A stretch of DNA of 64,000 nt. Source: Phallusia mammillata. Lineage: Eukaryota. The stretch is from the NCBI GenBank assembly GCA_965637545.1, contig OZ281496.1, positions 124,001 through 188,000 on the forward strand. The letters run 5' to 3'. The notes beneath the pieces were generated by a model that was given only the letters and a program-made list of their open reading frames with translations, made no database searches and was not told where the DNA came from. Shown here piece after piece: positions 11,291-64,000 of the stretch (the stretch's first letter is position 1; each line of letters begins with the position of its first letter). Both the position numbers and the translations under genes were made by a program.

Positions 11291-11479
11291 TAACATACCC
11301 GATGTCATTTTTAGCTCACAGTGACTGTCGATGGCCATAAATCACCAGATAAATTTATTGTTACCTATTTTAGATTCGAAAAAGCTTTGTATGAATCTAA
11401 ATTAAATGATATTTTTGTCAGTAAACATGATTTTGCATCTCGTTAATCATACAGGATTGTTTAGGATGTTGTTGTATAG

Positions 11480-24829: not shown

Positions 24830-30596
<5,767 letters not shown>

Positions 30597-34468: not shown

Positions 34469-37400
34469 TCACGTCAAATTAACTCGAAGTAACGGACTCT
34501 CTGGCGACTCCGTGCGGGTGCGCATGTTGTATGTCGTCACTGTGACGTCATAGAAAGGATACGTCAGTCGACGCACGACCCTGAAAATAAATCACGTGTA
34601 AAAGTTTGCGACAGAAATTCGACATATATTGTTGTACTTACGCTTTATTGTTACGTAACAATCGTATCGACCGGCTGACAATCTGAGTTCCAGCTCTGTA
34701 GAAACGAAGATTAAATCGGACGAATCGCGAAGCAACACCCGATATTCGAACAGATGACCATTCAAGTGTGACCGTGTTTGTAGTCGACGCAGTTTTCCGC
34801 AAACCGGTGGGTGGCGCTAAAGCGTCAGTTGGACCTTGGAACAAAAATGAGTCGTTAACCCTCGCGTTAGGCGGGAAGCCCTTAAAACTTCGCGGCGTTT
34901 CGATTGAATTGAGTGCGAGAATTATAAGAAAGACACGGCTGGCCAGAATGAACTGGAGCGAAATATAGAAGCGCTCGACGACAAAATTAGTCGAACCAAC
35001 GGTGCTCCTCTTGATCCAAACGCTCCAGTAAAATTAACGCAATTAATAAGTAGTTTGGATGGACTCGTAGAAAACAAAAGAAGCGATATTTAGATAGGAC
35101 CTGTTGGGCCGAAAGAGGTGAAAAAACACAAAATATTTTAGAAAAACGTCACGTTAAAAAATAAATAAATCAACCGTCTTAAAAGCGGTGACCAGGTCAA
35201 TACGGACCAAAAATCAATATTATCAGAGCTATCGCGATTTTTTGAAGACCTGTACAAAAGACTCTTACTTAGCCAATTTCAAACAATGAAATTAAGTTTG
35301 CCATTACCACAACGCCTGAAAATAAGTCACCGGGCCTCGACAAATTAAACGGAAATAATAGGCAAACATTGCACTTATATTTCGGACACGACCGTTAAGG
35401 TGATGAAGCAGGTCGCTCTTAATACACCTTATTCAATAAGTGGTTCATAACCTTTATTTTTCCTTGCTGCACCCCTTTCAAATCACCAACCAATTTTCGC
35501 CCCCCCGTTCAAATCACCAACCAATTTTCGCACCCCTTCCGTTTTTGTATTTATATAGAATAGACCTAACCAAACTTAATCATTCAGCATCGCCGCACCC
35601 CCTAGGAACAGTTCTTGCACCCCTTGGGGGTACGTGCACCCATGGTTAAGAATCCCTGCCTTATTGGCTCTAAAACGTAAACGAACTAATATAAAATTAA
35701 ACGGTTTTCACGACCCCACTTGGAATTGCAGTCAGAAACAGCTTGCAAAGTTTCAGTTTGTTCATATAAGCGAAACGGAAATAACAAGCTAACATAATAC
35801 TTATTTTCGAGTGCTCGACCGTTAACGCGATAAATTCCTCTTAATATAACGAATTAGTTCCTCTTAATACACCTTATTGACTCTAAAACGTAAACAAACT
35901 GAGATAAAATTAAACGGCTTTCACGATCCAATTTGGAATTGCAGCCAACCGATCTTGCGAAGTTTCAGTTTGTTCAGAATATCGAAGTGCATTCAACACA
36001 AATAATCTTCAGACCTTCAAAGTAAAGTGGGCTGGCCTTTAGTCCCACGTGTCGCTGCTAGCGTTTTCATTCTCGCCCGTCTTTCTATTAGATTTTCTCA
36101 CATATCAGGTTCACTCACTTTGTGTGACGATTTGAGCGGTCGGTCTGACAAAAACCGGACGCTGTTTTGTTGCAACGACTTGGCGGAAAGAAATCCCCGT
36201 TCCCGACGTCACTGGGCTTGCAGTGATGATGTAATCGGTGTTGGGGGATAGTGACGTAAATGCGACGACTTTGTGTTGAGGTTTGATCAGTTTCAGTTGA
36301 AGAACCTGAAATATTTGGCAATTAAGATTTCTTTCAAGACGCCAAAATCGCTTTTCCTTAGTGACGTCATATTACCCGATTGTTTCCCGGTGTCCTGATC
36401 TCGAATTTCAGAGTTCCGACGCCTTTCGGGAATTTGTTGATCGCCAGTGACACGTGACTACTGCCTAGTGATGTCACAGTGACGTTGATGGTCGATTCTC
36501 GGGCCGGGAGCGTTCTCACGATGATTTTCCCAACAACACCAGGTATGACGTCACCGCGCAGAGTGGCCGGTCTCACTGTGACGTCATAGTTGGTAGAAGG
36601 TTGGAGGTGAGAGATGAAAACTGATCTTCCTCCTCTCAGTCCCTCGAACACAGGAGTCGAACTGTCTCCGTCCAACTTCGTCACAACCAGTTTGAATCTG
36701 CGACAATCGATTTTTTACTCACTATTAAGCAGCATTGTGACGTCACAAGTACCTGTGTACGTTCTGGAATCCGACCCACATGACCTTGAATCCGGTGGAG
36801 GTCACGCCGCTAGGTGGGGCAAACGTGGAGAGAATCCTTTCATCGGTGAGCGCGCTCCCTACGTGTATCACAACCGGGGATTCCTGCAGTAAAATCATAC
36901 GCAGTCGTTGCCTTAACAACGGGAGCAGAAGCGACTTCGCTTTCACCACTGTGACGTCATTCATCTGTGACGTCACGACCACGGATAGCGATTGTGAGAG
37001 TCGCTCGCTTAACGAGTTGATCGTATCGTTTGTTGCGTCCCGAGATTCTTTCAGGAGTTTTATTTCGCGAGCGATTGAAACAATGCTTTCGAACGCGACC
37101 CCTTCTGTGGAACGCTTTCGTCGCCCGATCACCTTCTTCGGTCCTCCTAGAATGTGACGTAACAATCTCACTCTTGTTTATTTTGTTACGTAACAATCAC
37201 TGTATTTTTTGACGTAATAATTACACCATTCTGCATTTCTGTGTTCACTCACCAGAATTCCTTGTAATGGTCGATTGGACGGCGTTGCTTATTTGTTGAA
37301 TGTGTTCTAGAACTCTGGTTCGGAATTCCAGGTCCTCCCCACTTACAAACCCTCCTCTGTTTAGTCGCTCATCGTCGCCCTCTCGTGGTGAGCTGAAGTG

Positions 37401-40400
37401 AAATTTACAGTTGAACGGTTCAGTTTTTCAAGTGTAAAAGGCAACGCTTTGTGTAACATATAAGCGCAGAATCAGTCAAATCTGGACCATTCAACCGTTA
37501 TCCAATGATGTTTTTGCAGGGTTGCCGTCGACATGGACGCCGAAAAAAGGGACAACCGAAAAAATAGATTTTTTGAACAAATCGTATAAACATACGGGCC
37601 TTGACATGCCATGTTTTTTGCCAGGAACAATCTGTTTCAGCAACTCCTTGTTCGTAGAAAATACTTTATGCATCTCACAACAGCTCAAGTCTAGGTTTAC
37701 TTTTACTTGTAGCAGGGATTTGACTTGTAAATGTTGAAAATAAGAGAAAATAAGGATTCAAGTCAAAAACAAGGACAAATCTTAGAAAAAAGGACGGTAT
37801 GGCAACTTTGTGAATATGGTATTATGCACAAATCTAATTTGATTTCGTTACTGTTTATTTATTCCCGCAATAAACAAACACCATGCATCCATTGTAGTTG
37901 TGTTTAACTTTCAAACTTACTCTGGAATTGTTTGTATTGTTTCCAGGAAAGCTGTAACAACTGATTCGAGAATTCCGGTTGTCGGATCGCCCGTTGCCGT
38001 GACAATGCTTCGCGCGAACGGAAGAAACGGGGCTAGAATAAAAAATGTTGATATTTCATAAATTAATTCCATATATGAGTGATTTCTGGGCGTATGAGCA
38101 TCGACCCAGCTTGTTTAGTTTAGCTAATTGTGTTTCTACAATAGCTAGAATGTTTTTATGGATAAGTTTATTGATACATTGTTTTTGTAACACTTTTGCA
38201 ATTAAAGAGAGGAGATATGTTCTGATAATAACCAATGCTACTTGCACAGGAGCTCACACCACAGATTTGGGAATTTCCGATAAGTGGCGCAACGGAGCAT
38301 TGGCGTTCGTAATGGCAGTTGCGCTGAGTTAGCAGCTGTTGCCATCACAAACACAAACGTCTATGCTACGTTACGCTACCTATCGGAAATTCCAAAACCT
38401 GAGCCGTGAGTTTCTGTGTTAGTAGCTCTACCAATAAATAAGGGGTAAAAGGGGAATTCCCTGGTTCTCACCTGTTTTCACCGCGACCCAATCCCCAACA
38501 GTCAACGTAGTCGAATCGCTGCTAACCGCGTTCACTGTGACGTTATAATCAGTTCCAGCCGCGAGATCCTTCAATCGGTACTGTGACGTCACAAACATAT
38601 ATATTAGATGTTAGGTGCATAATGGTCTGTGACGTCAAAAACAAATTTCGATTGTTACCTCATTTGTTGAAATCCCGTTGATTCTGCGCACCATGCTGTT
38701 GCCAATAGCAACGACGAGCATGTATGATCTCGCGAACGGGGTCGGTGTCCACGTGACAAGGAATCCTGATGACGTAATCTGACTGATCATGATGCCACTT
38801 ACGTTATTCGCGTTCGGGTAAGCTGTAAGATAAGTTCAAGGTTAAAAACCTTTAAGTAAGCACGTGCTAACATAGAAAACATACGAATGGTGACCGGAAC
38901 AGCGGATGAGGGGGCGGATTCGAAATATCGTCCAATAGAAACAACAGACAACATGTAACGATTTCTGTAGCCAAGACCCTTTATCACGTATGGTGGTGTT
39001 GCGTTGCTGAAATCAACATAAAAATTACAAAATCTTCAAGTAAATATTTCAACCAAATTCTCACTTTTTGTATTTTTGTTTTATTTTCTTTTATTATTTT
39101 CTAATTTTTTTATATTTTTTTTAATTTTTAGTTCTCACTTGTAAACAAAAATTCTTCCACTTTTGCTGTTTTGCGCCCTCACGCGGTAACCAATGGCGCG
39201 TAACGCCGGCTCCCACGTCACCGTGACGTCATTGGGAGTGACGTGAAGAATTTGGAAATCCCCGGGAACACCGGGAACCAACCGACCTGCGTAATAATGA
39301 CGTCAATTGTCTTGTTAATGACGTAACAATGTGGTTGAGTGTGCGTCATAATACCGATTATTGCATCAAGGCAATGAATTTATTGCGGTATATGTTTGCA
39401 AGATTGATTAGAACTTTTTACATATAAACAAAATATTTATATGCAGGTAAACTTGTGTTAATTCAGCAAACGTGATTAATTATTTTCGTGTTAGTATAAA
39501 TTTTCTCATATTAAAGTTTTAAATTATTCTTTTTCTCGTTAAACAACATAGCAGATAATTTATCTTGGTTGGAATTAGCAGCAAGCATTGTTTCGTCACA
39601 ATAAACAGCTTTGATTGCACAAGAGAAGAAAAAGTGAAATAATTGCAAATTTACAATTATTTGCAAACGAAAGAGCCGCCGTTATTCTATAGCTCTCAAA
39701 CATTTTAATGGCGTGGTTTAAAACCATGACAAGTATACCATGGAATTTAGGCATTTTAATTATCTCGTGAATCCAGTAATTTGCCAACTTAGCAATGCAG
39801 CGAAAGCATTGAGTGATTTGACAGGGAAAGTATAGAGAAGAAGCAAGTAAAGCTATAAGAGAAAACGCAACAAAGCAATACAAAGCTGAACAATTGATGT
39901 CAAATTTGTTTGTTTGTTTTTCAATTTACCTCGTAAAATTTCTCTTTCGGTGCGTTCTGGAATGTTATCATGACGTAATTATCGATATTATGACGTACAC
40001 AAACATATCAATGAATCGGTTTTAGAATCGATTACGTCACCAACTCACGTGTTCGGGTTTTAACTACGTCACTTTCACGTGACCTGTCTCCTTCGCGTCC
40101 CACTGCTACGAATGTGACGTCATAAACGGTGTTTTGTTGCAGCTCGGTGATGAGTGTTGGAGTGAGCGCGCTGACTTGGCTGCGAGATGTTTCAAATATT
40201 TCAGTTGTTTGAGATAAGTATTTCCAGCAAAAATAAATATTTTAGATATAGAGTGAAACTAAAATTTAAATGAAACAGGTTTTAAACCGCTTTAACCCCA
40301 AAAGTGTGAAATATTTCGAAAATAAGGCGACACAAAGAAACAGGTGTAAGGCAGCGTTGACGTCACAAGAAAAATCTAGCCTGCGGTGGGATTCGGACCC

Positions 40401-43400
40401 ACGACAGGAGTCTTTCCGGGACTCGAGCTCTACCAACTAAGTCTCACAGGTTCAATGGTACACCCGCCGAAAGTCGAATCACAAACATTACTGGGAAACT
40501 TTGCTAAACTTTTGGCCTTTAATTAACTCAATTTAAAATAAATATTTTCAACCAATCTTACCCGACGCGTTTGGGAATCTGTCTTCGGGTTTTCACCTGG
40601 ATCTCATAAGACACTGCATGTGGAATCGGCCGTAACGTCACAACGAACGAATCATGCGTCACAGAGCCTATTGTCATCAACGGGGTGACCACGTGACGCG
40701 GCATCACCGGAGAAGGAAAACCTGGAGACAAAAATGAAATTATTCTGATGGAATTTCACAAATAATAATACGCGCGTTCTTTCTTGTTGGCAACGGACAA
40801 TTCTCCGATTGGCCCATAAAGAATCCAATAACACAAGGCTTAGTTTATTTTATGTAACTTTTCATTGTATGTCTGCGCTCTTACGCGCTTTTCACTGTTC
40901 AAGTGTTTATCGCATTTTGTGTTTATATGCGTGTTTATGTTTTTAGTTTGACGGGAATCAATCAGAGCTTTTTAGTGTTATGCTAGTCATATCAGCCACT
41001 GTGTTGTTGTCGCTTGTTTCATCTGCCTTCAACCCGTCCATTTTCGGGTTCGGGCCGGGCCGATTCGGGTTCGGGCCGGGTTTCGGGCTTCAATTTCGGG
41101 CGCGTTTGCAACTCTGGTGCGACTTTCGCCAATAAACAACGACACCGGAGTCACAAATAACAGCTTAACACTTACGAGGAATCACTGTGATTGATCGACT
41201 TGCTCGAGATTTTTCAAATTTCCCAACTGACGTCACTGTTATGACGTAACTGGCACGATGACGTAAATCGGTGACGTTTGTAGTTGTTCCCTTCACGTTT
41301 CTGGAAACACAAAGAAACATCAACAAACGTATTTAAGGTTCACACAACATCGAGAATACCTGATTGTTTGGACAGAGTCCGTTTCGCTGTTCAGCACTGT
41401 GACGTCATAAGACAAAGCTCGCAAAGCGCGAGACCACACGATGATCACGTGGTTTGATCTGATTCGCGTCGCGCGAAGTCCGGTCGGGATTCGGGGAGGA
41501 AATGGTTCTGTTGAGAAAGTTGGGGCAATATGGATTTGTTAAATGTGCAACCTGGTGAGGGGGCAGGGGGATGAAAAATATTTGCTGCGATTTTTACACA
41601 CAAAGTTTATGTTTGTTTGTGATACATGGGCATAACTCGATTTGTCGCCAAACAAGTTTGTATTATATATTTTTCTTTTATCTGATTCCAACCTATTTCA
41701 GTTGAGATCAATTAATTTGTAACTGGGATCAGTCCTTGATCATTGATGCAGACAAGCGATCATGGCACACTCATACAAAAATCACACTACTCCAGTCCCA
41801 TTGAAGGCGCCCCATCCAACCTACTTGTTCGAATTCGCGATGGCGGCGAACTTTCTTCTGTTGTTGCTCCCGAAGCCCCTACAGCTTTCATTGTGACGTT
41901 ATAATGGGTGTCGGCGAACAATAGATCGATTTCCAACGAGGTTTCAGTTTGACCCCTACAAGGTCAACATATGACGTTAGATGACGTAACAAACATATAC
42001 GAACACTGAATCGCGTTCTTACTTGACCGTGTATTCTTTATCCCCTCTGTCGGAACGCAGTATTATGACGTAACTAACGGCGTTTGTGATCTGGGGCCAT
42101 CTAGCGACGAGACTGGTTTGTGTGGTGTTTTGGATGGTTAATAATGGTTCTCTGGTGGTTGGAAGAACTGGTGCTAGGGAATCTATAAAAACAATGATTG
42201 ATTACTGCCTGTGAACTGTGTGCAGTGGGACCACAAGTCAACAGATGCTTAGTAGAAGAGACGGAGACTTAGTATGAGAGACGAAACAGTTGCTTATAGC
42301 AACAGACTAAAATCTATGACAGGTCTGAAGTCATCCACTGTTACTACCTAAGTAGTTAAGCAATACTTAATTAATAGGCATCATCAGTATCCAAACACTA
42401 AAGAATCTTGGACAAGTTAAACTATCAACCACTAACAAGCTTTACAAAAATATGCTGAAAGTAAATTTGAATTGGCCGTCTGTTTGCGCAGTCAAAATAC
42501 AGCAAAACTCATCTTGTTAGTTCTTTACAGTTTAACTTGTTCAAGGTTCTTTACCGCTGTTTGTTTTTAGATACTAATGATGCCTATTATCTAGGTGAAA
42601 TATATATATATCTAAACATAAAAAACGGTGGATGACTTCAAAAAGTCTGTCAGTCTGTTGTCTACGCGACTCTTGTCTCCATCTCTCGAGTCTCTGGTGA
42701 TTCGGGATTTATTAGTTCTCACCAGGGTTGCCAGGTAGTGACGATTAGATTCGGACAATATTTGTCTGAAAATCGGACATTTTAGGACAAAAAAAAACTA
42801 GAGCGTATAATTGCTAACAAGGCATCAATATCGAGGTGCCAACAGCCATTTTTGTGCGCTTACGTTTCCTACACTCATAAGCGCGAGTTTTAGAAAAATG
42901 CAAAGGGGTTGACGTAAAACATGACAAACTTCCCATGTTTGACAAAAAAACGACATGTTTAAAATAATATTTAGTCGGCAATTGCAAACACGTTGCTGTA
43001 GCGTTTATCATTGGTTTTAGCAACGTTTAAAAAATGTTTTGTCAAGTTGTTGCTTCAAATCACCTTAGATAACCATCTGTTACAATACATTTGAATTGTA
43101 CACAACAATGGCCAGACATTCACTGGTAGGCAATTATGTGTTTAACGTCATAAACAAGGCACTAACCAAAACAAGTTGCAGTTTTAAGCCACGTTTTGTC
43201 GTTAAAGAGATTTGCAACCTTCAAAAAATAGGATTTTCGGACATATAACAAAATTCGGTCATATTAGGACAAAAAACTAAATGTCCTAATGATTTTTAGG
43301 CGTCGGACACAGCATGTGAAATTAGGCCAATTTATCGTTTTTTGTCCGAATTTTAGGCCACCTGGCAACCCTGGTTCTCAGTCTGTAGATAATCGCCTGT

Positions 43401-46400
43401 TGCATAATTTTACCCGTGACATCACACTTACATGTTTGTTGCGTCAGAGATTGACTTCGTTTACTTTCGAATCCATCTGAGTTTATCGCGGTAACTTCGA
43501 AAGTATAGTTGACCCCGGGCTTAAGGTCACCGATTATGACGCTGTTTGACGTCACAGTGTGTTTTGTTTCAAATTCAGTTCCGGCCTTGCGTTTGTCGCT
43601 AACTGTACTGATGACGTAAACATGATACGTCTCAGCTCCTGCAATAAGATCCAACAATTCAGCAATACTGTAAATTTTCTCACAATGATAGCAGTAATAT
43701 GTGGTGATGTATATTAACATAATTTGTAATGTTAAATGTTTTACACTAATGGACCCGTATAGGACGTTGAAACGTCGGTACAAAAATACATCAGCCAGAA
43801 GAGTTCTGCAAACTTGATATTATGCCTGGCAGCAATAGCTTATATAAAACGACCAGAGGGGGCGCTACAGCTGGGGTTGGGAATCCCTGGTGTAACTGGT
43901 GATAATCTACATGTGAGATGAAATAAACCATAATTTTGATGAGTTTTTGAGATTTTACTAACACACAAGAATGTGGCATATGACCTAGCGTATAACGCCA
44001 AATAACTTTTGTCACTTCAGTCAGTGGTCGGCAACCGCCGGTCCGGGGCCCGGTACCGGTCCGCGAGGAGTTCGTTACCGGGCCGTATAATTTTTCATGT
44101 TAAATGCTATAAAACATTTTGTCCATGTATCCCGGGCATGATAAACTAATTTAAGCGTTTTTATAGCTATATATTTGTAGTTTTTTGAAGACCGGTCCGC
44201 GATAAAATTTTAGTTTCAAAACCGGTCCGCATTGCAAAAAAGGTTGCCGACCCCTGACTTAAGTAACTGGTGACAAAGTAAATGTGAGAAGAAATAATAC
44301 ACAATTCACAAGTTTGAAACCTCTAACAGCGTTCCATGATAATCCGATGGCGGTTTCGTTGATTCGTTCGCTCACAAGCTTCGTTGGTGCAGAAGGACCT
44401 GCAATGATTCATACGTAACAATCACACATGATCACCAGCTCGCAACATGCGTGACAAAGTTCCTTACGTGTTCTGACAAGCAGTGACGTCACTCTGGTGC
44501 TTTTTATGCCTTCATGCGTAACGGAGGTCACGTGTACTTGGTAGAGGGTTCCTGATTGGATGTTTCCAATTAGCGCTGACGTGGCGTTCGTGTTCACCAC
44601 AAACGACTTCCCGCCTCTTTTCTGCTCTGTAACCGTGACGTCATATGACGAAGCACCTACAGAAAGTAAGTATTTCAAAATATGAATAACAATAATTCTA
44701 AACATAACAACTTTAAGTTGCAATAACACACGTTAGCACTTGGTAAAACATTTTTCTTTTACAAACGTTGGTGCGTAAACCATTGGTTAAAACAGGTGAC
44801 AAATAAAAACCTGCATTATTTGATAACTTATTTATTGAGTTGTTCATTTAAAACAGTGGAAACTTTTTTATTGTCGGGGCCAAATGGTATTTTTTTAAGT
44901 GTGTAGAGAGCCGCAAAACAACGAAACCTTCAGAAAATCACTACAGATTATGACTTTAAAAGCTAAAATAGCAATGTTTGGTGGTTTTCTGAGGTCTGGT
45001 GCGAGCCGCAAAATAAGTAGTTGGGAGCCGCATGCGGCCCCGAAAACCGAGTTTGAGAACCACTGTTTTAAAAGGTACTTTGTCTCATCTTACCTTTGAC
45101 AGCATCCCATACTATCTCGACCGAATCCTCATTAACTCGTGTTGCAACAGCGACCTTTGGTGGTAGAGGAGCTGCAAGAAGTTTTAAATATTAGATAAAC
45201 AAAAATCATTGCGATAAAATGAAACATACTGACGTTTTGACAACAATATTTTGATTCCCAGCAACTACAACCAAAAATGGACGAATTATGAAAAACAACA
45301 ACATATTTCATGTTTGGAAGCATTTTTGAACATATCAGTCAATAAAATAATCTTATAATAATTTCAAAATTGTAACAACTTAACTATATTTATTTACACT
45401 TGACTTTTATAACAACAGTTTGTGTTTTAACCTGTTCGCTGCTGCTTCACCACAGTTTTACTGATTCGGTTCTGAACGTTGATCGATTTCACTTCAACTG
45501 AATACAAAGTCCCAGGTTCAAGTCCAACCACCGACATTCTAGTGGTTCGAACCTTTTGTGACGTCACTACGTTGCTTCCGTCACGAACTATGACGTCATA
45601 AGTAACAGCTCCTAAAGAACAAAGGTTTAGAAGCCGATAATTGTTGTTTCTTTATTGTAGTTTTACCTTTCATCTCTTCCCACTGAAGTACAAACGATTG
45701 TGACGTCACCAATGACGTAGTAACCTCGTTTGGCGGGAGAGGAACTAAACATAATCACGTGACCGAATGACGTAAAGCAAACAGATTCGATGTTTACTCA
45801 CCCGTGACCGCAACAACTTCGCGGCTCCACGAAGGACTCCGACGTCCCTTGGGGTCAACCGAGGTCACCCGGAATCTGTACCTCGTGCCTGCAACAAGAC
45901 CGGTGACGTCATCGTGTACGTCATCAGACGGGAAAGTGATGCTCGCTCCGTCGACATCGGGAAGAACTTGAAGTAGGTAGGATGAGGCGCCTGCATAAAA
46001 TGTTTTCTATTTGAATAAGTTTTTGAACAATGCGTGTAGTGAATAACGAGGTTTTGATAAATTGTTTTCATACTTTCTTATTTTGATAAATATAACTTTT
46101 TAAATATTTTTCTATTCGAATAAGTTTTACAGTAAAGCTTACCTTCCACTGTGTCCCAGCTCAGACTCACAGCACTTGTTGTGACGTCATTTATCTCAAT
46201 AGTGTCTGGAGCATCAATCACTGTGAAAATATGTAACAATTGTCGACATTTATATTTTTTAAGGCATTGTAGTTTTTATATGTTTAACTCATTTGTAAGA
46301 ATGTATCATTTATCATTCATGCTAAACACACATCATCACGAAGTCTTACGTGTCATTTTTGTGATGCTTTCACTGTTTCTGCTCATATGACCGTCTGGTG

Positions 46401-49400
46401 ATACCGCTATCACCGTGAATCTATATTCCGTGACAGGATTTAGCTTCCCAAATACGATCATGGGAGTTTTGGTGGTGACATTAGTGATAAGTGATTCATC
46501 AATTTCGTGATACATGACAATATATGAATCCGCTCCTACATAACAATGATTAAGTGTTTATAAAAATATTTTAGTCAATTTTTAAAGATTTTTGAACAAA
46601 CCTTTTTCTTTGTTCCAACGCAAAGTCAGGGATGATTTTGTGACTTCGGAGATTGCCAAGTTTTGAGGAGAATTCGGTGCTAAAAAAATAAATAAATGAA
46701 TTGTTGTCATAAATATCTTTGCCACTAAGGTAGATATGCTCGACTATTACCATTAGGAGACTACAAGGCAACGCGATGAAACAAAGCATGACGATAAAAA
46801 CAACGTTGATATTCTTGACATCTCAGCGTGATTTACATTTAAAATGCCAACGTCAGCTTTGTGCTGTCGCGTTAGCCTTTCTTTATTTCGATGACACGCG
46901 TTTGTTACCAGTTTGTTGCGTCACAATTGGACTTCCGGTTTGGGAAATTCTTTCTTGATCTCCGACAGAAAACACTCGAATGTTGTAACGCGTCCCAGCA
47001 GAAAGTCCATTTATTCCGATGTTATTATTCGTTGCATCCAAACTCCGAGTCATAGCAACATTCTCGCTGTTTGTGACGTTGACAATATACGACCTTGCAC
47101 CGAAAGCAACCGACCATTCCACGTTAATCGATTGTGACGTCACAGTTGTGACGCGAAGCGAGGAAGGCGGAAGAGGGACTGAAGTAAATCAAAATATTAG
47201 AATCACGTGAGTAACTTTCATGTGATCATGAGATTCACCTGTTTGTGTTTGAACTTCATGTGAACCAATACTCGTGATATTTTTGTGACCAACAGATTTC
47301 ACCGTGAATATGTAAATCGTTCCAGGATACAATTCATTGATCACAATAGATGTTTGTGACGTCAAAATGGACAGGGTGTCTTTTAAGTGAGACTTAACAG
47401 AAACCAAATAACGAATCGAACCTTTAAAATAATAATAATCAGATAAGATATATTTTAAGCTTGGCATTCCGAGAAATTGGTAAAGGTATTAACACACGAA
47501 CTCACACTACAAAAAGTTTGCTAAATACCGATAGATGGCGTAAAGAGCGCAGTTATTTCAATTAACAGTGAGACTGGGGTAGGGTGGGGGACTAAATTTA
47601 ACACAAAGAACTGGGTAATTAGGTCGATTATAATTATTACGAAACCTTAGATTAGGCCAACCCTAATAGTCCTAACTGTCCGCATTTTTTTTTTATTTTT
47701 TTTTTATTTTATTTTATTTTTTTTTTTTTTATTGATAAATAATAAAAAGAGCGAAAAACGGTAACAAACTACATCACACTTCAGTACATAACAGGCGACA
47801 CCACTTTTTGCGGTAAGCAAGAAAGTTTCCACGTTTTTTTGATACATGACATTCTGATACACGTACTGAGTTAAGGAAGCATACAAATCTAAATACCGTC
47901 GGTTTATTTTCACTATATTTGCATTGGTAAATGACATATCTGGCACATAACAACATACAGTTCACCAATTTATCGCCGGATCCACCATTGTGGACACCAA
48001 AAAGTAAGTTCACGGGAGGTAACGTCAGTGGGACTCGGGTTCTAGCACTAATCCATGCACAGACGTTTTCCCAATACAACTGTCCGCATTTTTTACATAA
48101 ATTGCATTTAAAATATTAGCGTTGCGCCACCTACCGAAAATTAGCAAATATGTGGTGTGAGTTCCTGTGTTAGTAGCTCTACCCTGAGAATCATACACTT
48201 TACCTGTGACGTCAGTGAAGGTTAACTGAAGTGACGTTGAAGTGATGTCATTAACAGTTAATTCTTGAGGTGGGAGTGGGACTAAAAAGTAACAAAAGTT
48301 AGAATAAGAATATTATCTCGTTGAAGATATGTTTACCTGTTTGTTGCGTCACAACGGCGAAATCGTCTTTGTTTATTCTTTGTTTTTCTCCGTATGTGAA
48401 AACCTGGAATCGATAAACTCTCCCCGCCTTAAGGTCGTCTATTGTCGCTTCGTTTGTCGCAAAGTCAATGCTCATTATGACGTCATTAGAGTCTTCTAAG
48501 GTGACGTCGACTAAGTAGGAGGTTGCGCCTGAAATTTTTTAGAGGATTATTTAAAATCTACACAAATATTTTAATTTTGATTTTAATGTAAACAGCAGTA
48601 ATCTTTATATTTATTTAGGAAAAGCAATTTAATGACAAGACTTAGTTTGATATTTTATTTACCAACTACGTCCGTCCACTCCAATGCAACCAAACTTGTT
48701 GTGACAGTTTGAACAGAAATCGACGCCGGAGACGAAGGAACTGGAAAATATTTGATGTTGAAACCAAACAAAATCACCCAACAAGTTCCATGTTACCTGT
48801 CTGTTCCATCAACTCATGTGATTGAGCGCTCGTGAGGTTTTCGTGACCGACTGCTTTCACCGTGAATCGGTACGTGATACCTGGCATCAGTTTATTAATG
48901 ACAATCGCTGTGTCTGACGTAATAATCGATGACAATGGCGTATTGTTTGATGTGTATTCGATAACATAGAAATTCGCGCCTGCAAACAATGGAAAAGTTC
49001 CGAAATCAGCTGAAACTTTGAACCGACCGAAAACTCAAACCTTTCACTTTGTTCCATGACGTAGTAATTGAAGAAGATGTGACGTCATCAACTATGAAAT
49101 CCTCGGGTGGATTTGGAACTGAAAAGTGAATTTACAACGATTATTTAAAAATGTAAAACGAACAGAAAACTTCGGTACAAACCTGTTTGTTGTGCAACAA
49201 AGGCATTTTCTTCCTCATTTGCGCGACCAGAATGACCGATTGTTAACACAGTAAAGTTGTAGAACTTTCCTGAATCGAGTCCGCTGATTGTTACAAAACT
49301 GTTCGAACTGTTTACTGTCATTATGACGTCACTGGTACTTTGAAATCTGACTTTTATGACGTAAGAAATCGCCCCTGAATAGGAAAAAAACATTACAAGG

Positions 49401-52400
49401 TTTTTTAGATAATGCACAATTCCACAACACAAGTAGTTTTGTAATAATTACCTCTAACGTCATCCCATGATAACGTCACTGAGGAGTTTGTGACGTCATC
49501 CACTTTCGGGATTCCAGCGATGTTTGGAACTGAGGTAATAAAAGTGTTTTGGTTTAATTAATAAACAATGGATAACTGTGACATCACAGAGCTAGCTGAC
49601 AGAGCTTTGTTACAAAACAAACAAACAAACTCGTAAGTGAAATTAAAATTGAGTGAAAGTAAAATTACAAATTCATGAAGGCTGGACCAAATATCGTAGA
49701 AAGTGGAAAATTACGTTTGGTAAACTACACTTGACTACAATAAAAATCAAAGAAGAATAAACTGTACAAATATAATTCGCTGTAATCATTGATCAACATG
49801 CACATGCCATGGCATTGTTAAACTTACCTCAAACCCTGTAATAAGCTTTCTGAGCATGCCATGCAAGTTTACATGCATAAAAATTAACCTTGTAAAAATA
49901 AAACAATAATAAGTTTAAAAAAGCTAAAAAACAAACAAAATAAAGAAACGGTAAAAAGAATCAGTTGAAAGGTAACACAGAAATCGTATTTTACCTGTGG
50001 TTTCTTCAACTTGCAAACTCGCTTCGCTCATCCGACTTTCCTCACCAATACTTTTCACAACAAACCAATATCTCGTTCCACTAGATAATGACGTCACTTC
50101 AAGACGTGTCAACGTCGTTTCCATGGTGTTCGTGACGTCATCATCAACGGTTCCGTATTCGAGTCGATATTTAATGGCTCCTGCAACGAAAATTAATTCA
50201 AACAGTTGGACATTACGACTCTTTCTGGATTAAATAGAAAAACAATCAACTTACCAGATACGTCATTCCATTGTACGATAACGGATGATGTAGTTACATC
50301 TGTTATAATGACGTTACCAGGGGCAAGTGGTACTGCAAAAAAAATGATCTGGTGTTAATTAATATGTTTGTGAATGAGTTGAGTTGGTGGTAACAAGTTA
50401 ATCAGTGTCAACTTAACTATCAGGAAATATCAAGTAGTTGTTGATCTCACTGTTGAATTTCTTTGTTTTTTTTCAATTCAATTTTTTTTATTTTTTTTTG
50501 TACCTGTATAAATTCTTTGTTTTGACGTCATAAATGGATTGCTTCGATTTTTTGTTCCGACTGATGTCACAGCTACGTCATATCCTGTTCCTGGTTGCAA
50601 ATTCGAGATTCGAGCGGAAGTACTGTGGACAAGCAGTAGTTGCTCCATGACGTCATCACTGGTGACGTAGACCTTGTACATTTCCGCACCTGATAATTTT
50701 AAAGTCAAGTTAAAAAACAAATTACGTGATGACGTCAATTTTGAAAAACTACCTTTTACGTCATTCCATGTGACGTAGAAAGATGTTGTAGTGACGTCAT
50801 TTATAGTAGGAATATCAGGAAGCGATGGAACTGAAAACAATATTAATGAAAACTCAAATTACTTTTCCGTAGTTAAAAACACTGAACCACGAGAGTTGAT
50901 CGCAACACAAATGAATGGACAAATAGAAATCTTATTTTACCTGTGGTTTCTTCAACTTGCAAACTCGCTTCGCTCATCCGACTTTCCTCGCCAATACTTT
51001 TCACAACAAACCAATATCTCGTTCCACTAGATAATGACGTCACTTCAAGACGTGTCAACGACGTTTCCATGGTGTTTGTGACGTCATCATCAACGTTTCC
51101 ATATTCAAGTCGATATTGGGCAGCCCCTGAAATAATGCCGCAAAAGTTGTAAGTCGGTTCTCGCGGAAATATCCCAGTTCAAACTGCTTTTTCTGCCTCT
51201 TAACGAACATTTAAAGCAGGGGTTCTTAAACTTTTGCGGTCGTACCCCACTTTACACTATTTATTTAATCTCACGTCCTCCCTAAATAAATATTAGCATC
51301 GATAAAATCAATCAGAAGGATACGTCTTTGAATCAGATGCACTGAAAGTAATGGCAATCTCCAATGCAAAATTGCGAACAAATAGAGAATTTACGGGAAA
51401 GAAAAGAAGCCAGGGTTAAGACATCATAACTTACCAATGACGTCACTCCAACGTAATACAACTGATGACGTGGTGACATTTGTTATGATGACGTTGTCAG
51501 GAGCAAGAGGAACTGAAAACAACAATAAACTTGTTTACAATGCTATTAACCAGTGGTAACTTAGTGTTGAGTAATTAACTAACCAGTGGATTATTAACTA
51601 ACCAGTGTTGGATTATTAACTAACCAGTGGATTATTAACTAACCAGTGTTAGATTATAAACTAACCAGTGGGTAATTAACTACCCAGTGGATTATTAACT
51701 AACCAGTGGATTATTAACTAACCAGTGGATAATTAACTAACCAGTGGATAATTAACTAACCAGTGGATTATTAACCAACCAGTGTTGCATTATTAACTAA
51801 CCAGTTCTGCATTATTAACTAAGGATTGAATCATTAACTAACCAGTTTGTATTTGTATTTTTTCACTTCCTCTCTCATTTCTTCTGTCTTTGATTCCAAT
51901 AGAGAAAACAACAAAATCGTACCACGTGCCTGGGTTTAAACCAATCACAACCGCCTGAGCTGGAATTGTTTCCAAAACTTGTCGCGTATCTTCCGTCCCA
52001 TTGGTCCGATAAATCACGTGATATTTTTCCGCGCCTGGAATATTCAAGTTTTAAATCAAACTTAACCAAAACATTTCATTTCTAAGCAAACCTTGGACTG
52101 GTTTCCAACGCAACAGAACTGACGTGGTTGTGACGTCATCAAAGTTTACTCCTGAGGTAGCCGCCGGTCCTGTGACGTCATCAACCAAATTAGTAATGAC
52201 GTAAATATGACGTAACTAATTTCAACTTACGGGTTGTTTCACGTGTTTGAACACTTGCGGCGCTGTGACGCCCAGAAACCCCAACTGACGTCACGGTTAT
52301 GACGTAAGTAGTTCCGGGAATTAGGTTTTTGAGCACTGATGATGTCACATTGGAGGTTTGGTTGTAAATTGTGACGTTGTCGTTTGTCGCAAAATACCGG

Positions 52401-55400
52401 ATGACGTAATCAGTTGCACCTGGTGACGAAACAAAACAATTATTAAAACCATTTAAACAAAAACGAAACGAAATAACTCACCTCGTACATTTGTCCAAAA
52501 CAAATTAAGGGATTTTGTGTTTATTTGTGAGATTTCTATCTTTCGAGGTGGCAGAGGAACTGAACAAAATATTAAATGTTTTAAGTTTCACCGAGAAAAC
52601 TTACTGAACCTACTTCACCTGTTTGAACTTGAACGTGAACTTCAGGGTCAGAATTAACCACACCCAAATCTCCAATAGAAATCACACGGAACTTGTACCA
52701 GCTTCCTGGCCTCAAAGCAGTCGCAGTTGAGGTCGTTGAAGCTGTTTTCGGGGTTTTGAAAGTTTCGTTTGAAGATAAAGTTACTTGGAGTTCGTAAAGG
52801 TTGGCACCTGATGTAAAAGTTTAAAGAAACAAACATGACAGCTACTTAAATTTTAAGTGATTGCAATTTTAACGGGTTGAATAAGTTTAATACTTTGCAA
52901 GATATAAAAGCGTAATACTATTCTTGGTAGCATTTCCTCAAGGGTAAAATTTATTACAAACTGGTTGCCACTTACCTACGACCGGTTGCCAGGCAACGGA
53001 GATACTTGTTGTTGTGACCTTGCCCAATGAAATGACCTTCACAGCCTCTGGTACTGAAAATAAATCAGGTTTACTCCACAATATCGCAACATTACAAGCA
53101 GAAAGACTCACAAGTTGCAATCGACAACTCTTCGCTTTTCCCGCTCTCAACTTTCCCGCCAAAACCAACAGAACTGACGGAAATACCGTGTTCCCTTCCC
53201 GCTTCCAGGAAATTCAACCTGTGTGACGTAACGTTCACTGTTACGTAGGCAGTGACGTCAGTGAGCGCGTTGACGTAAGCGAGTTTGTAGCTGGAAGCCC
53301 CAAAAACTTCGTTCCACGACACCGACATGGAATCGGTGGTTACCATGACAACGGAGACGTCAGAGGGAATTTCGGGAACTGCAAAATATTTTCATGGTTA
53401 GTCAGACTTTATTTGTGACATCACAATGATCTTTGTCACCTGTTTGTTGATGAACAATCGGGCTTCCTCCTAGACTTTCGCGGTTTTTCGAATCCACAGC
53501 AAATACTTTGAAACCATAAACTGAACCGGGATTCAAATTATCGATGGAAACATCGTTTGTGGGTGAATGTTGTTTACTGGTTTCGTTCAAACTCGATATT
53601 TCTACCAAGTATTCAAGCGCTCCTACAAACAACAAGTGTTAGTACGTGATGAATAACGTTGCTGTCATGTTATTCTGCCTTATAGGGTTGTGTAGATATT
53701 GTTCAAGAATTGCCACAGCATACGAATAATATCTTATATTAAAAAAAATGTTTTACAATATATTTTCAAAATCACGAAAAAGTTTTCACCTTTGACCTCT
53801 GCCCATTGGAGTGTGACGGTTGTAGAAGTGACGTCAGTGACAGTTGGCGCGAGCGGATTTTGAGGAACTAAAAATAGAAAAAAACAGAAATATTCGATTC
53901 GTGAGAATTTCCGGACGTTGATTTGGTCAAATGCTCTTTGCAGACCTTGCAAGTTAAGATAACTGATAACATCTACAATTTAGTTGGCAGCAATCTAAAC
54001 TGGCTTTTATGTTGTTATTTCCTCCAATTTTTAAAATGTTGCGTTTTGACAAATCTTATTTTACCTGTGGTTTCTTCAACTTGCAAACTCGCTTCGCTCA
54101 TCCGACTTTCCTCGCCAATACTTTTCACAACAAACCAATATCTCGTTCCACTAGATAATGACGTCACTTCAAGACGTGTCAACGACGTTTCCATGGTGTT
54201 TGTGACGTCATCATCAACGTTTCCATATTCAAGTCGATATTGGGCAGCCCCTGAAATAATGCCGCAAAAGTTGTAAGTCGGTTCTCGCGGAAATATCCCA
54301 GTTCAAACTGCTTTTTCTGCCTCTTAACGAACATTTAAAGCAGGGGTTCTTAAACTTTTGCGGTCGTACCCCACTTTACACTATTTATTTAATCTCACGT
54401 CCTCCCTAAATAAATATTAGCATCGATAAAATCAATCAGAAGGATACGTCTTTGAATCAGATGCACTGAAAGTAATGGCAATCTCCAATGCAAAATTGCG
54501 AACAAATAGAGAATTTACGGGAAAGAAAAGAAGCCAGGGTTAAGACATCATAACTTACCAATGACGTCACTCCAACGTAATACAACTGATGACGTGGTGA
54601 CATTTGTTATGATGACGTTGTCAGGAGCAAGAGGAACTGAAAACAACAATAAACTTGTTTACAATGCTATTAACCAGTGGTAACTTAGTGTTGAGTAATT
54701 AACTAACCAGTGGATTATTAACTAACCAGTGTTGGATTATTAACTAACCAGTGGATTATTAACTAACCAGTGGATTATTAACTAACCAGTGTTAGATTAT
54801 AAACTAACCAGTGGATTATTAACTAACCAGTGGATTATTAACTAACCAGTGGATAATTAACTAACCAGTGGATAATTAACTAACCAGTGGATTATTAACC
54901 AACCAGTGTTGCATTATTAACTAACCAGTGCTGCATTATTAACTAAGGATTGAATCATTAACTAACCAGTTTGTATTTGTATTTTTTCACTTCCTCTCTC
55001 ATTTCTTCTGTCTTTGATTCCAATAGAGAAAACAACAAAATCGTACCACGTGCCTGGGTTTAAACCAATCACAACCGCCTGAGCTGGAATTGTTTCCAAA
55101 ACTTGTCGCGTATCTTCCGTCCCATTGGTCCGATAAATCACGTGATATTTTTCCGCGCCTGGAATATTCAAGTTTTAAATCAAACTTAACCAAAACATTT
55201 CATTTCTAAGCAAACCTTGGACTGGTTTCCAACGCAACAGAACTGACGTGGTTGTGACGTCATCAAAGTTTACTCCTGAGGTAGCCGCCGGTCCTGTGAC
55301 GTTATCAACCAAATTAGTAATGACGTAAATATGACGTAACTAATTTCAACTTACGGGTTGTTTCACGTGTTTGAACACTTGCGGCGCTGTGACGCCCAGA

Positions 55401-58400
55401 AACCCCAACTGACGTCACGGTTATGACGTAAGTAGTTCCGGGAATTAGGTTTTTGAGCACTGATGATGTCACATTGGAGGTTTGGTTGTAAATTGTGACG
55501 TTGTCGTTTGTCGCAAAATACCGGATGACGTAATCAGTTGCACCTGGTGACGAAACAAAACAATTATTAAAACCATTTAAACAAAAACGAAACGAAATAA
55601 CTCACCTCGTACATTTGTCCAAAACAAATTAAGGGATTTTGTGTTTATTTGTGAGATTTCTATCTTTCGAGGTGGCAGAGGAACTGAACAAAATATTAAA
55701 TGTTTTAAGTTTCACCGAGAAAACTTACTGAACCTACTTCACCTGTTTGAACTTGAACGTGAACTTCAGGGTCAGAATTAACCACACCCAAATCTCCAAC
55801 AGAAATCACACGGAACTTGTACCAGCTTCCTGGCCTCAAAGCAGTCGCAGTTGAGGTCGTTGAAGCTGTTTTCGGGGTTTTGAAAGTTTCGTTTGAAGAT
55901 AAAGTTACTTGGAGTTCGTAAAGGTTGGCACCTGATGTAAAAGTTTAAAGAAACAAACATGACAGCTACTTAAATTTTAAGTGATTGCAATTTTAACGGG
56001 TTGAATAAGTTTAATACTTTGCAAGATATAAAAGCGTAATACTATTCTTGGTAGCATTTCCTCAAGGGTAAAATTTATTACAAACTGGTTGCCACTTACC
56101 TACGACCGGTTGCCAGGCAACGGAGATACTTGTTGTTGTGACCTTGCCCAATGAAATGACCTTCACAGCCTCTGGTACTGAAAATAAATCAGGTTTACTC
56201 CACAATATCGCAACATTACAAGCAGAAAGACTCACAAGTTGCAATCGACAACTCTTCGCTTTTCCCGCTCTCAACTTTCCCGCCAAAACCAACAGAACTG
56301 ACGGAAATACCGTGTTCCCTTCCCGCTTCCAGGAAATTCAACCTGTGTGACGTAACGTTCACTGTTACGTAGGCAGTGACGTCAGTGAGCGCGTTGACGT
56401 AAGCGAGTTTGTAGCTGGAAGCCCCAAAAACTTCGTTCCACGACACCGACATGGAATCGGTGGTTACCATGACAACGGAGACGTCAGAGGGAATTTCGGG
56501 AACTGCAAAATATTTTCATGGTTGGTCAGACTTTATTTGTGACATCACAATGATCTTTGTCACCTGTTTGTTGATGAACAATCGGGCTTCCTCCTAGACT
56601 TTCGCGGTTTTTCGAATCCACAGCAAATACTTTGAAACCATAAACTGAACCGGGATTCAAATTATCGATGGAAACATCGTTTGTGGGTGAATGTTGTTTA
56701 CTGGTTTCGTTCAAACTCGATATTTCTACCAAGTATTCAAGCGCTCCTACAAACAACAAGTGTTAGTACGTGATGAATAACGTTGCTGTCATGTTATTCT
56801 GCCTTATAGGGTTGTGTAGATATTGTTCAAGAATTGCCACAGCATACGAATAATATCTTATATTAAAAAAAAATGTTTTACAATATATTTTCAAAATCAC
56901 GAAAAAGTTTTCACCTTTGACCTCTGCCCATTGGAGTGTGACGGTTGTAGAAGTGACGTCAGTGACAGTTGGCGCGAGCGGATTTTGAGGAACTAAAAAT
57001 AGAAAAAAACAGAAATATTCGATTCGTGAGAATTTCCGGACGTTGATTTGGTCAAATGCTCTTTGCAGACCTTGCAAGTTAAGATAACTGATAACATCTA
57101 CAATTTAGTTGGCAGCAATCTAAACTGGCTTTTATGTTGTTATTTCCTCCAATTTTTAAAATGTTGCGTTTTGACAAATCTTATTTTACCTGTGGTTTCT
57201 TCAACTTGCAAACTCGCTTCGCTCATCCGACTTTCCTCGCCAATACTTTTCACAACAAACCAATATCTCGTTCCACTAGATAATGACGTCACTTCAAGAC
57301 GCGTCAACGACGTTTCCATGGTGTTTGTGACGTCATCGTCAACGTTTCCATATTCAAGTCGATATTGGGCAGCCCCTGAAATAATGCCGCAAAAGTTGTA
57401 AGTCGGTTCTCGCGGAAATATCCCAGTTCAAACTGCTTTTTCTGCCTCTTAACGAACATTTAAAGCAGGGGTTCTTAAACTTTTGCGGTCGTACCCCACT
57501 TTACACTATTTATTTAATCTCACGTCCTCCCTAAATAAATATTAGCATCGATAAAATCAATCAGAAGGATACGTCTTTGAATCAGATGCACTGAAAGTAA
57601 TGGCAATCTCCAATGCAAAATTGCGAACAAATAGAGAATTTACGGGAAAGAAAAGAAGCCAGGGTTAAGACATCATAACTTACCAATGACGTCACTCCAA
57701 CGTAATACAACTGATGACGTGGTGACATTTGTTATGATGACGTTGTCAGGAGCAAGAGGAACTGAAAACAACAATAAACTTGTTTACAATGCTATTAACC
57801 AGTGGTAACTTAGTGTTGAGTAATTTACTAACCAGTGGATTATTAACTAACCAGTGTTGGATTATTAACTAACCAGTGGATTATTAACTAACCAGTGGAT
57901 TATTAACTAACCAGTGTTAGATTATAAACTAACCAGTGGATTATTAACTAACCAGTGGATTATTAACTAACCAGTGGATAATTAACTAACCAGTGGATAA
58001 TTAACTAACCAGTGGATTATTAACCAACCAGTGTTGCATTATTAACTAACCAGTGCTGCATTATTAACTAAGGATTGAATCATTAACTAACCAGTTTGTA
58101 TTTGTATTTTTTCACTTCCTCTCTCATTTCTTCTGTCTTTGATTCCAATAGAGAAAACAACAAAATCGTACCACGTGCCTGGGTTTAAACCAATCACAAC
58201 CGCCTGAGCTGGAATTGTTTCCAAAACTTGTCGCGTATCTTCCGTCCCATTGGTCCGATAAATCACGTGATATTTTTCCGCGCCTGGAATATTCAAGTTT
58301 TAAATCAAACTTAACCAAAACATTTCATTTCTAAGCAAACCTTGGACTGGTTTCCAACGCAACAGAACTGACGTGGTTGTGACGTCATCAAAGTTTACTC

Positions 58401-63822: not shown

Positions 63823-64000
63823 CTGTAATATAAATTAGAAAGTAAAATTATGTCGACAAGCCGTGGCTGCCAGGCATGATATCAAGTTTATAGAGCTCTT
63901 CTGGCAAATGTAATTTTATTCCAACGTTTCGACATCCTATGCAGGTCGCATTCATCAGGGTAAATAACACTGAATGTACGTAGTACAGTGCACGATAAAC

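What the first reader, a model, noticed from the sequence alone, without database searches (positions are those of the whole stretch)
36550..36558. RGD at the same position as the fibronectin FNIII-10 integrin loop
FN3 domain 41 reads PSTNYDVTVRPATLRGDVIPG. Fibronectin FNIII-10 reads [21 protein letters not shown]. The spacing from the conserved F-strand Tyr to RGD is identical (10 residues), which places RGD in the F-G loop that integrins bind (established for fibronectin). It is the first domain after the furin site, so cleavage could release or expose an integrin ligand (inference). Caveat: its codons CGC GGT GAC GTC A overlap the over-represented TGACGTCA motif, so it could be a by-product.
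Basis: partly seen in the sequence, partly recalled or inferred. Interest (0 to 1): 0.78.

Follow-up and report, generated by a model that had tools for sequence, protein, structure and literature searches.

The report
RGD loop in ascidian matrix giant
A sea-squirt gene for a giant secreted matrix protein really does carry an RGD tripeptide in the same loop that integrins bind in human fibronectin. The motif is kept in only one close relative, so it is an untested candidate adhesion site of a well-known kind.

Summary
On the minus strand, 36558-36550 reads CGC GGT GAC (RGD), in the context NYDVTVRPATLRGDVIPG.

**What the gene is**
- It belongs to Phallusia mammillata: a 5021-aa protein with a signal peptide, one VWA domain, 48 FN3 domains, a helical spacer with RRKR, then 3 FN3 domains and a stop.
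- It has no transmembrane segment and no phosphatase domain, although it is named "RPTP eta-like".
- Spliced contigs from three studies show it is transcribed and confirm the exons.

**Where the RGD sits**
- AlphaFold2 (pLDDT 93) puts it in the F-G loop.
- HMMER aligns it without gaps onto the RGD of human fibronectin FN10.

**Conservation**
- A colinear orthologue from an unnamed ascidian (JGI metagenome contigs, about 54% identity) keeps RGDVI with three synonymous changes and no TGACGTCA. The motif by-product caveat is therefore weakened.
- Clavelina (PENQ) and Ciona (ISGI) lack RGD, although the loop flanks are conserved.

**Chance**
- About one RGD is expected anywhere in the protein.
- About 0.05 is expected in an F-G loop.

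**Verdict**
This is a lineage-restricted candidate integrin site, about 45% likely to be functional. The furin-exposure idea is untested, though the RRKR is conserved in 3 of 4 species. It is a new member of a known kind, of modest interest. The scan has not noted this on other DNA.

The parts
36550..36558 (-). RGD codons (CGC GGT GAC), P0001 residues 4798-4800
36546..36553 (.). Copy of the palindrome TGACGTCA overlapping Gly(T)-Asp-Val-Ile(A)
36376..36697 (-). Exon encoding strands C to G of FN3 no. 49 (with the RGD) and the first half of FN3 no. 50
   Evidence: splice joints; splice dinucleotides and translation
36753..37146 (-). Exon encoding the RRKR site, three predicted helices of the spacer, and strands A-B of FN3 no. 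49. FN3 no. 49 as a whole spans 36820-36753 plus 36697-36505.
37112..37123 (-). RRKR dibasic (furin-type) site, P0001 4628-4631, followed by Ser
37253..38032 (-). Two exons (37921-38032 and 37253-37392) encoding the first two predicted helices of the spacer
36119..36305 (-). Exon with the second half of FN3 no. 50
34469..34834 (-). Last two coding exons (34642-34834 and 34580 down to the stop codon at 34471-34469). They encode FN3 no. 51 and the C-terminus ...LLRVNLT. No transmembrane or cytoplasmic part follows.
38472..64000 (-). Upstream FN3 exons of the same gene, which runs off the window's upper end

Best explanation
The RGD is a real, expressed tripeptide in the F-G loop of the 49th of 51 FN3 domains of a giant secreted protein of the ascidian Phallusia mammillata. 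The protein has a signal peptide, one VWA domain, 48 FN3 domains, a five-helix spacer with an RRKR site, and three more FN3 domains. I take it as a lineage-restricted candidate cell-adhesion site that would work like the fibronectin FN10 and tenascin-C FN3-3 loops. In that model the protein is laid down in extracellular matrix, and the loop presents RGD to the ascidian RGD-clade (PS2-type) integrin. Shown here: the sequence, the exon structure, transcription, the FN3 fold, loop membership, the register shared with FN10, the secreted architecture, and retention of RGDVI in one orthologue despite synonymous divergence. Inferred only: integrin binding, and any role of cleavage at RRKR. The motif is not an ancestral feature of this protein family, because Ciona and Clavelina lack it.
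For: RGD is in a loop between strands F and G of a confident FN3 model. The FN3 fold is confirmed by Foldseek (TM 0.70-0.77) and by VIA-align (Z 10.9, rmsd 2.5 A over 90 residues onto FN10 in 6xay). HMMER aligns RGD on the RGD of FN10 without gaps. The protein is secreted: it has an N-terminal hydrophobic leader, no other hydrophobic stretch, a VWA domain plus FN3 domains, and no phosphatase family in its Pfam list. It is transcribed and spliced in runs of three studies, and no difference from the window was listed at the RGD in the three spliced runs laid or in the unspliced DNA-type run X11. The colinear orthologue on JGI contigs (53-54% identity) keeps RPANIRGDVIEG with codons CGC GGT GAT GTT ATT, against CGC GGT GAC GTC ATA in the window. 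That is three synonymous and no replacement changes. The other RGD of the protein, in a C-C' loop at 4115, is not kept in that species. The chance expectation of RGD in an F-G loop of this protein is about 0.05. Ciona has one alpha integrin in the RGD-binding PS2 clade (PMC1145181). Ciona fibronectin lacks RGD (PMC5006582). RGD in F-G loops is the accepted marker of putative integrin sites in tunicate and lancelet tenascins (PMC11401434).
Against: The tripeptide is replaced by ENQ in Clavelina lepadiformis and by SGI in Ciona intestinalis, where the four loop-tip residues read PENQ and ISGI against LRGD. The loop flanks RPAT and IIPG..G[KR] are nevertheless conserved, so RGD occupies the variable tip of the loop. 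Only one RGD-bearing orthologue was found. At about 54-58% identity, three residues match by chance roughly one time in five. Basic residue then Gly or Asn at +10/+11 is the consensus of this protein's F-G loops, so only the Asp is unusual. The Asp-Val is exactly what the genome-wide TGACGTCA bias favours. The finding is post hoc: a genome with very many FN3 domains should hold a few chance RGDs in F-G loops. The loop is followed by a conserved hydrophobic stretch and is modelled with high confidence, unlike a floppy protruding loop. Side-chain exposure was not computed. No binding data exist.
Confidence: 0.45

Rival explanations
1. The RGD is an incidental tripeptide. The F-G loop tip is a tolerant position, and it happens to spell RGD in the Phallusia lineage. 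It is retained in one relative through shared ancestry and ordinary structural constraint, and it has no adhesion function.
For: About one RGD is expected in 5021 aa. The loop consensus already supplies a basic residue and Gly. RGD is not conserved in Ciona or Clavelina although the flanks are. F-G loops of neighbouring domains are about as well conserved between Phallusia and the JGI ascidian, for example REGDRSRES against REGDKSEES.
Against: The position-specific chance is only about 0.05 for this protein. RGDVI is the invariant core of the loop between the two closest species, while the residues on both sides changed and three codons changed synonymously. The other RGD of the protein was not retained.
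Confidence: 0.4
2. The RGD is a by-product of the TGACGTCA bias. The DNA palindrome, favoured for its own reasons throughout this genome, imposed Asp-Val here, and RGD is a side effect.
For: There are 92 copies in 64 kb. Of 34 in-frame Asp-Val pairs, 26 are encoded GAC GTC, and Asp-Val is about 2.3 times over-represented. The RGD overlaps one copy.
Against: The orthologue encodes the same RGDVI as GGT GAT GTT ATT, without the motif, on a contig with only 3 copies in 19.7 kb. The amino acids are therefore kept where the motif is not. In Phallusia the motif can be reached from that reading by synonymous changes alone. Arg and most of the Gly codon are outside the motif. An ancestral motif that decayed at its CpG in the other species cannot be excluded.
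Confidence: 0.07
3. The RGD is a cleavage-activated ligand. Convertase cleavage at RRKR releases a C-terminal fragment of about 390 residues (three helices plus three FN3 domains), and only then does its RGD become available to integrins.
For: RRKR followed by Ser fits the R-X-K/R-R convertase consensus. It sits in a low-pLDDT loop between helices 2 and 3. It is kept as RRKR in Clavelina and RKRR in the JGI ascidian. The F-G loop of an FN3 domain lies at its N-terminal pole, which faces the preceding spacer (general FN3 topology, established knowledge).
Against: There is no evidence of cleavage. The site is conserved in Clavelina, which has no RGD, so its role does not depend on RGD. About 95 residues of spacer would stay attached after cleavage. 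The inter-domain geometry of the model is unreliable (pTM 0.49).
Confidence: 0.08

Closest known systems
Human fibronectin, tenth type III module (FN10), RGD loop
   Same: It has the FN3 fold and RGD in the F-G loop at the same distance from the F-strand Tyr (Arg at +10). The F-G loop length is nearly the same. FN10 chains are the best PDB sequence hits, with RGD on RGD, and the structural match is Z 10.9. Both proteins are secreted matrix proteins.
   Different: This protein has no FN1 or FN2 modules and no PHSRN-type synergy site in a preceding FN3. The preceding element is a helical spacer. RGD is followed by a hydrophobic VIPGVVG rather than SPASS. Sequence similarity is marginal (E 0.005-0.1) and partly due to the RGD itself. 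Integrin binding is untested.
Tenascin-C third FN3 module, and tunicate or lancelet tenascins with RGD/RGE/KGD in F-G loops (PMC11401434)
   Same: RGD sits in an F-G loop of one FN3 domain within a long FN3 array of a chordate matrix protein. The motif comes and goes between related species. For example, P. mammillata tenascin has RGD and Ciona tenascin has RGE.
   Different: This protein has no tenascin assembly domain, no EGF repeats and no fibrinogen globe. In tenascin-C the Arg is at +8 from the Tyr, not +10.
VWA plus FN3 matrix proteins (collagens XII, XIV, XX and VII; WARP)
   Same: It has an N-terminal VWA domain followed by FN3 repeats and is secreted. Collagen XX FN3 is among the fold hits.
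   Different: No collagen triple helix or TSPN domain appears in the Pfam list. It has 51 FN3 domains and a helical spacer with a dibasic site.
R3-type receptor tyrosine phosphatases (PTPRJ/eta), the name given in the database
   Same: The FN3 repeats resemble DEP-1 FN3 families (weak Pfam hits).
   Different: It has no phosphatase domain, no transmembrane segment, and it ends in an FN3 domain. The database name is misleading.

Membership tests
RGD-type integrin-binding FN3 module (FN10 / tenascin-C FN3-3 kind) | FN3 beta-sandwich fold | tested here: met
   AF2 pLDDT 93.2 with seven strands; Foldseek TM 0.70-0.77 to FN3 domains; VIA-align Z 10-11.4
RGD-type integrin-binding FN3 module (FN10 / tenascin-C FN3-3 kind) | RGD located in the F-G loop | tested here: met
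   Domain residues 75-77 lie between F (64-72) and G (84-89). The placement is the same in the larger model. HMMER aligns it on the FN10 RGD.
RGD-type integrin-binding FN3 module (FN10 / tenascin-C FN3-3 kind) | Protein is extracellular | tested here: met
   Hydrophobic N-terminal leader, no other hydrophobic segment, VWA plus FN3 only. This is a prediction, not an experiment.
RGD-type integrin-binding FN3 module (FN10 / tenascin-C FN3-3 kind) | Side chains of Arg and Asp are solvent-exposed | not testable with these tools
Only loop membership is known.
RGD-type integrin-binding FN3 module (FN10 / tenascin-C FN3-3 kind) | RGD-dependent binding of an integrin or RGD-dependent cell adhesion | not testable with these tools
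   Needs a bench assay. A PS2-clade alpha integrin exists in Ciona (PMC1145181).
RGD-type integrin-binding FN3 module (FN10 / tenascin-C FN3-3 kind) | Motif retained in orthologues | tested here: inconclusive
   Kept in the JGI ascidian orthologue. Absent in Clavelina and Ciona.
Fibronectin | FN1 and FN2 modules flanking the FN3 core | tested here: not met
   The Pfam list of P0001 has no FN1 or FN2 family. The N-terminus is VWA.
Tenascin | EGF repeats and a C-terminal fibrinogen-related domain | tested here: not met
   The C-terminus is an FN3 domain. No such families appear.
Receptor tyrosine phosphatase, R3 type | Transmembrane segment and PTP catalytic domain | tested here: not met
   No PTP signature in six frames of the window. 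No PF00102. No hydrophobic segment. Transcript contigs end just past the stop codon.
Proprotein-convertase (furin-type) substrate | R-X-K/R-R motif in an accessible loop of a secretory protein | tested here: met
   RRKR followed by Ser at 4628-4632 lies in a stretch with pLDDT under 50 between helices. It is kept in 3 of 4 species.
Proprotein-convertase (furin-type) substrate | Actual cleavage | not testable with these tools
   Needs protein analysis.

The most novel reading that the evidence does not exclude
An ascidian-specific giant VWA-FN3 matrix protein is cut by a convertase in a helical hinge. Cleavage yields a C-terminal three-FN3 fragment whose FN10-like RGD loop is the main RGD ligand of the single PS2-type integrin in the Phallusia lineage. 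This would supply an adhesive function that ascidian fibronectin, which has no RGD in Ciona, does not provide. It would be an independent, convergent invention of the fibronectin cell-binding loop.
Probability: 0.1. Interest if true: 0.6.

Novelty: new member of a known kind. Interest (0 to 1): 0.3.

Why it matters
If the loop binds an integrin, it would be an independent origin of the fibronectin-type cell-binding loop in the sister group of vertebrates, in a protein no one has studied. It would also name a ligand for the ascidian RGD-clade integrin, whose matrix partners are unknown. Ciona fibronectin has no RGD. Phallusia embryos are transparent and easy to manipulate, so the test is feasible. 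If it does not bind, the case is a reminder that RGD in an FN3 loop of a 51-domain protein is close to what chance and loop consensus allow. Separately, the database name "RPTP eta-like" should be corrected: this is a secreted VWA-FN3 protein.

Tried and rejected
- The word-index protein search gave no further orthologues. It was run with the RGD exon alone, with the full protein restricted to the C-terminal region (only the query's own entry was found), and with a 1522-aa C-terminal slice.
- Metagenome scans: an alignment of four species was too divergent to make patterns. The Phallusia protein alone found nothing. A three-species alignment recovered only the same JGI ascidian, on three contigs. 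One of those contigs ends before the RGD exon.
- Pfam on single exon translations misses fn3, because the domain is split over two exons. This was resolved with the deposited protein.
- A weak hit of the RRKR exon to paramyxovirus Fusion_gly F0 (E 0.012, 14 bits against a cut-off of 29.8) was rejected as below threshold.
- I considered a SEA-like or Notch-HD-like fold for the spacer, because of SLSVVV and a dibasic site in a loop. The model is all-helical, so I dropped it. The spacer alone was not searched for fold matches (one search was filled by FN3 hits).
- I looked for a receptor phosphatase downstream and found none.
- A literature search for the accession numbers and the JGI sample id found nothing.
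- The species of the JGI contigs could not be named.

Full report
**Observation**

The stretch 36550-36558 is read on the minus strand as CGC GGT GAC, which is Arg-Gly-Asp. One of the window's 92 copies of TGACGTCA lies at 36546-36553. It covers the last base of the Gly codon, Asp, Val and the first base of Ile.

**Gene model and expression**

Contigs of three runs from three studies are spliced on this stretch, while a DNA run is not. Every skipped piece has GT..AG ends on the minus strand. After adjusting for the tool's stated cut offsets, all eleven exons have canonical splice sites and give one open frame.
- The RGD exon is 36376-36697.
- The preceding exon is 36753-37146, and the shared codon AG|A gives Arg.
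- The frame ends at ...LLRVNLT with a stop at 34471-34469. Two of the spliced contigs extend about 250 nt beyond the lower edge of the stretch laid (34400).
- At the RGD codons no difference from the window was listed in any of the four runs. One variant in the exon (36603 G>C, Gln to Glu) is seen in one run.

**Identity of the protein**

An exhaustive HMMER search with the exon translation found a 5021-aa protein whose C-terminal part is identical to my spliced translation. It is CAB3265300.1 / A0A6F9DQI9 of Phallusia mammillata, named "receptor-type tyrosine-protein phosphatase eta-like".

That name is not borne out.
- Pfam finds a VWA domain at 42-206 and then FN3 repeats.
- The precomputed Pfam list has no phosphatase, collagen, EGF, fibrinogen, FN1 or FN2 family.
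- There is a hydrophobic leader, followed by NERRKRD, and no other hydrophobic stretch.
- An iterated HMM counts 51 FN3 domains: 48, then a gap at about 4530-4725, then 3.

The RGD (4798-4800) is therefore in FN3 number 49. The protein reads as a secreted matrix giant.

**Structure**

AlphaFold2 was run on residues 4724-4817, with three orthologous rows and 21 paralogous FN3 domains. It gives mean pLDDT 93.2 and the seven-strand FN3 pattern. Strand F is at 64-72, RGD at 75-77, a single bridge residue at 78, and strand G at 84-89.
- Foldseek returns only FN3 domains, including FN10-derived monobodies (TM 0.70-0.77).
- VIA-align on the larger model aligns 90 residues onto FN10 in 6xay at Z 10.9, rmsd 2.5 A.
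- A PDB sequence search ranks human FN10 chains first (E 0.005 to 0.1). It aligns ISHLQPSTNYDVTVRPATLRGDV on [23 protein letters not shown] without a gap. The three identities of RGD contribute to that ranking.

**The spacer and the dibasic site**

The 190 residues before FN3 49 are predicted as five helices (pLDDT mostly 73-90). RRKR (4628-4631; window 37123-37112) lies in a stretch with pLDDT below 50 between helices 2 and 3. The pTM is only 0.49, so the packing of the spacer against the FN3 domain is unknown. Cleavage would leave three helices, about 95 residues, attached in front of the RGD domain.

**Orthologues**

Four species could be compared.
- Clavelina lepadiformis XP_076820779.1 (5778 aa) and Ciona intestinalis XP_078481437.1 (3607 aa) share the C-terminal architecture. 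They are 38% and 27% identical over the spacer plus FN3 49.
- A 61-aa fragment led to JGI metagenome contigs (samples 3300001463 and 3300001539, plus a third contig). These carry a colinear orthologous gene of an unnamed ascidian, 53-54% identical.

The loop reads as follows in each species:

| Species | F-G loop |
|---|---|
| Phallusia | RPATLRGDVIPGVVGK |
| JGI ascidian | RPANIRGDVIEGIVGK |
| Clavelina | RPATPENQIIPNVAGR |
| Ciona | HPSTISGIIIPGAVGR |

The flanks are conserved in all four, and the tip varies. RGD is shared only by the two closest species. In the JGI ascidian the codons are CGC GGT GAT GTT ATT, against CGC GGT GAC GTC ATA. That is three synonymous differences and no replacement, and no TGACGTCA. 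The residues on both sides of RGDVI differ between these two species. The protein's other RGD (4115, in a C-C' loop) is not retained there. The dibasic site is RRKR, RKRR and RRKR in Phallusia, the JGI ascidian and Clavelina, and is absent in Ciona.

**Chance**

From composition, 0.8-1.0 RGD is expected in 5021 residues, and 2 are present. Clavelina and Ciona have none.

In this protein's F-G loops, Gly is common at +11 (27%), a basic residue is frequent nearby, and Asp at +12 is rare (5%). Summed over registers, the expectation of RGD in an F-G loop is about 0.001 per domain, or 0.05 per 51 domains. That is low for this one protein. It is not low for a genome-wide, after-the-fact reading.

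**The TGACGTCA caveat**

The bias is real and strong in this gene.
- 26 of 34 in-frame Asp-Val pairs are GAC GTC, where codon usage predicts about 19%.
- 25 of those are full motif copies.
- Asp-Val is about 2.3 times more frequent than expected.

The motif therefore does shape proteins here. At this site, however, the orthologue keeps the same five residues without the motif. The amino acids are thus maintained independently of it, and in Phallusia the motif can be reached by synonymous changes. I cannot exclude that the common ancestor had the motif and the other lineage lost it by CpG decay.

**Background from papers**
- Ciona has eleven alpha integrins, one of them in the RGD-binding PS2 clade (PMC1145181).
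- Ciona fibronectin has no canonical RGD (PMC5006582).
- RGD, RGE or KGD in F-G loops is used as the sign of putative integrin sites in tunicate and lancelet tenascins. P. mammillata tenascin has one RGD where Ciona has RGE (PMC11401434).

Turnover of such motifs between related species is therefore usual and does not by itself exclude function. No paper mentions this protein.

**Verdict**

- Placement, fold, secretion, expression and the upstream dibasic site all hold.
- The by-product caveat is weakened.
- Conservation is split: one close relative has RGD and two distant ones do not.
- Binding and cleavage-dependent exposure are untested.

I rate the readings as follows: functional adhesion site about 0.45; incidental tripeptide about 0.40; cleavage-gated version about 0.08; motif by-product about 0.07. 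The feature is a new member of a well-known kind, and interest is modest.

Noticed in passing
window 321-63790 (whole window): TGACGTCA occurs 92 times in 64 kb. At least 41 copies lie in codons of this gene: 25 read x-Asp-Val-x and 16 read x-Thr-Ser. Of 34 Asp-Val pairs, 26 are encoded GAC GTC, and Asp-Val is about 2.3 times over-represented. The motif therefore imprints the protein sequence. The orthologous contig of another ascidian has only 3 copies in 19.7 kb. No paper on this was found.
   Followed up: partly
window 36820-38032, minus strand (P0001 4536-4725): The 190-residue spacer between FN3 48 and FN3 49 is predicted as five helices, with RRKR in a disordered loop. It matches no Pfam family. 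Its fold was not searched on its own.
   Followed up: partly
P0001 residues 1-40 (outside the window): A second dibasic site follows directly after the signal peptide (NERRKRDVT). It is matched by SRSKRNA in Clavelina, which suggests an N-terminal propeptide.
   Followed up: no
P0001 as a whole (CAB3265300.1): The database name 'receptor-type tyrosine-protein phosphatase eta-like' is misleading. The protein has no phosphatase domain and no transmembrane segment. It has a VWA domain and 51 FN3 domains and ends in an FN3 domain.
   Followed up: yes
window about 42022-42201, minus strand (P0001 4115-4117): A second RGD (LRSDRGDKEY) lies in the C-C' region of FN3 44. It is not kept in the JGI ascidian, which reads LRGGGLIDKRE.
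   Followed up: yes
window 40035-40241, minus strand: The F-G loop of an upstream domain reads GREGDRSRES, a near-RGD (REGD). It is kept as GREGDKSEES in the JGI ascidian.
   Followed up: no
window 36603: A G>C difference (Gln to Glu, six residues before the Tyr of strand F) appears in the contig of one RNA run. It is probably a polymorphism.
   Followed up: no
The deposited protein may not carry the same number of cassettes as this assembly.
   Followed up: no
window 17073-18092 and 26922-28724, plus strand: There are two long open frames on the other strand, downstream of the gene's end. One is Ser/Pro-rich and one is Lys/Ser/Glu-rich, both of low complexity, with no Pfam match. They are probably other genes.
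   Followed up: partly
window about 11470-11680: A run of 200 N marks an assembly gap. It was left untouched.
   Followed up: no
L001/L002/L004 (JGI contigs JGI24021J15306_10000589, JGI24022J15233_10001493, Ga0210059_1020672): Host DNA of an unnamed ascidian sits in three metagenome samples. In that species an intron follows FN3 49 directly, whereas in Phallusia the exon runs on into FN3 50.
   Followed up: partly
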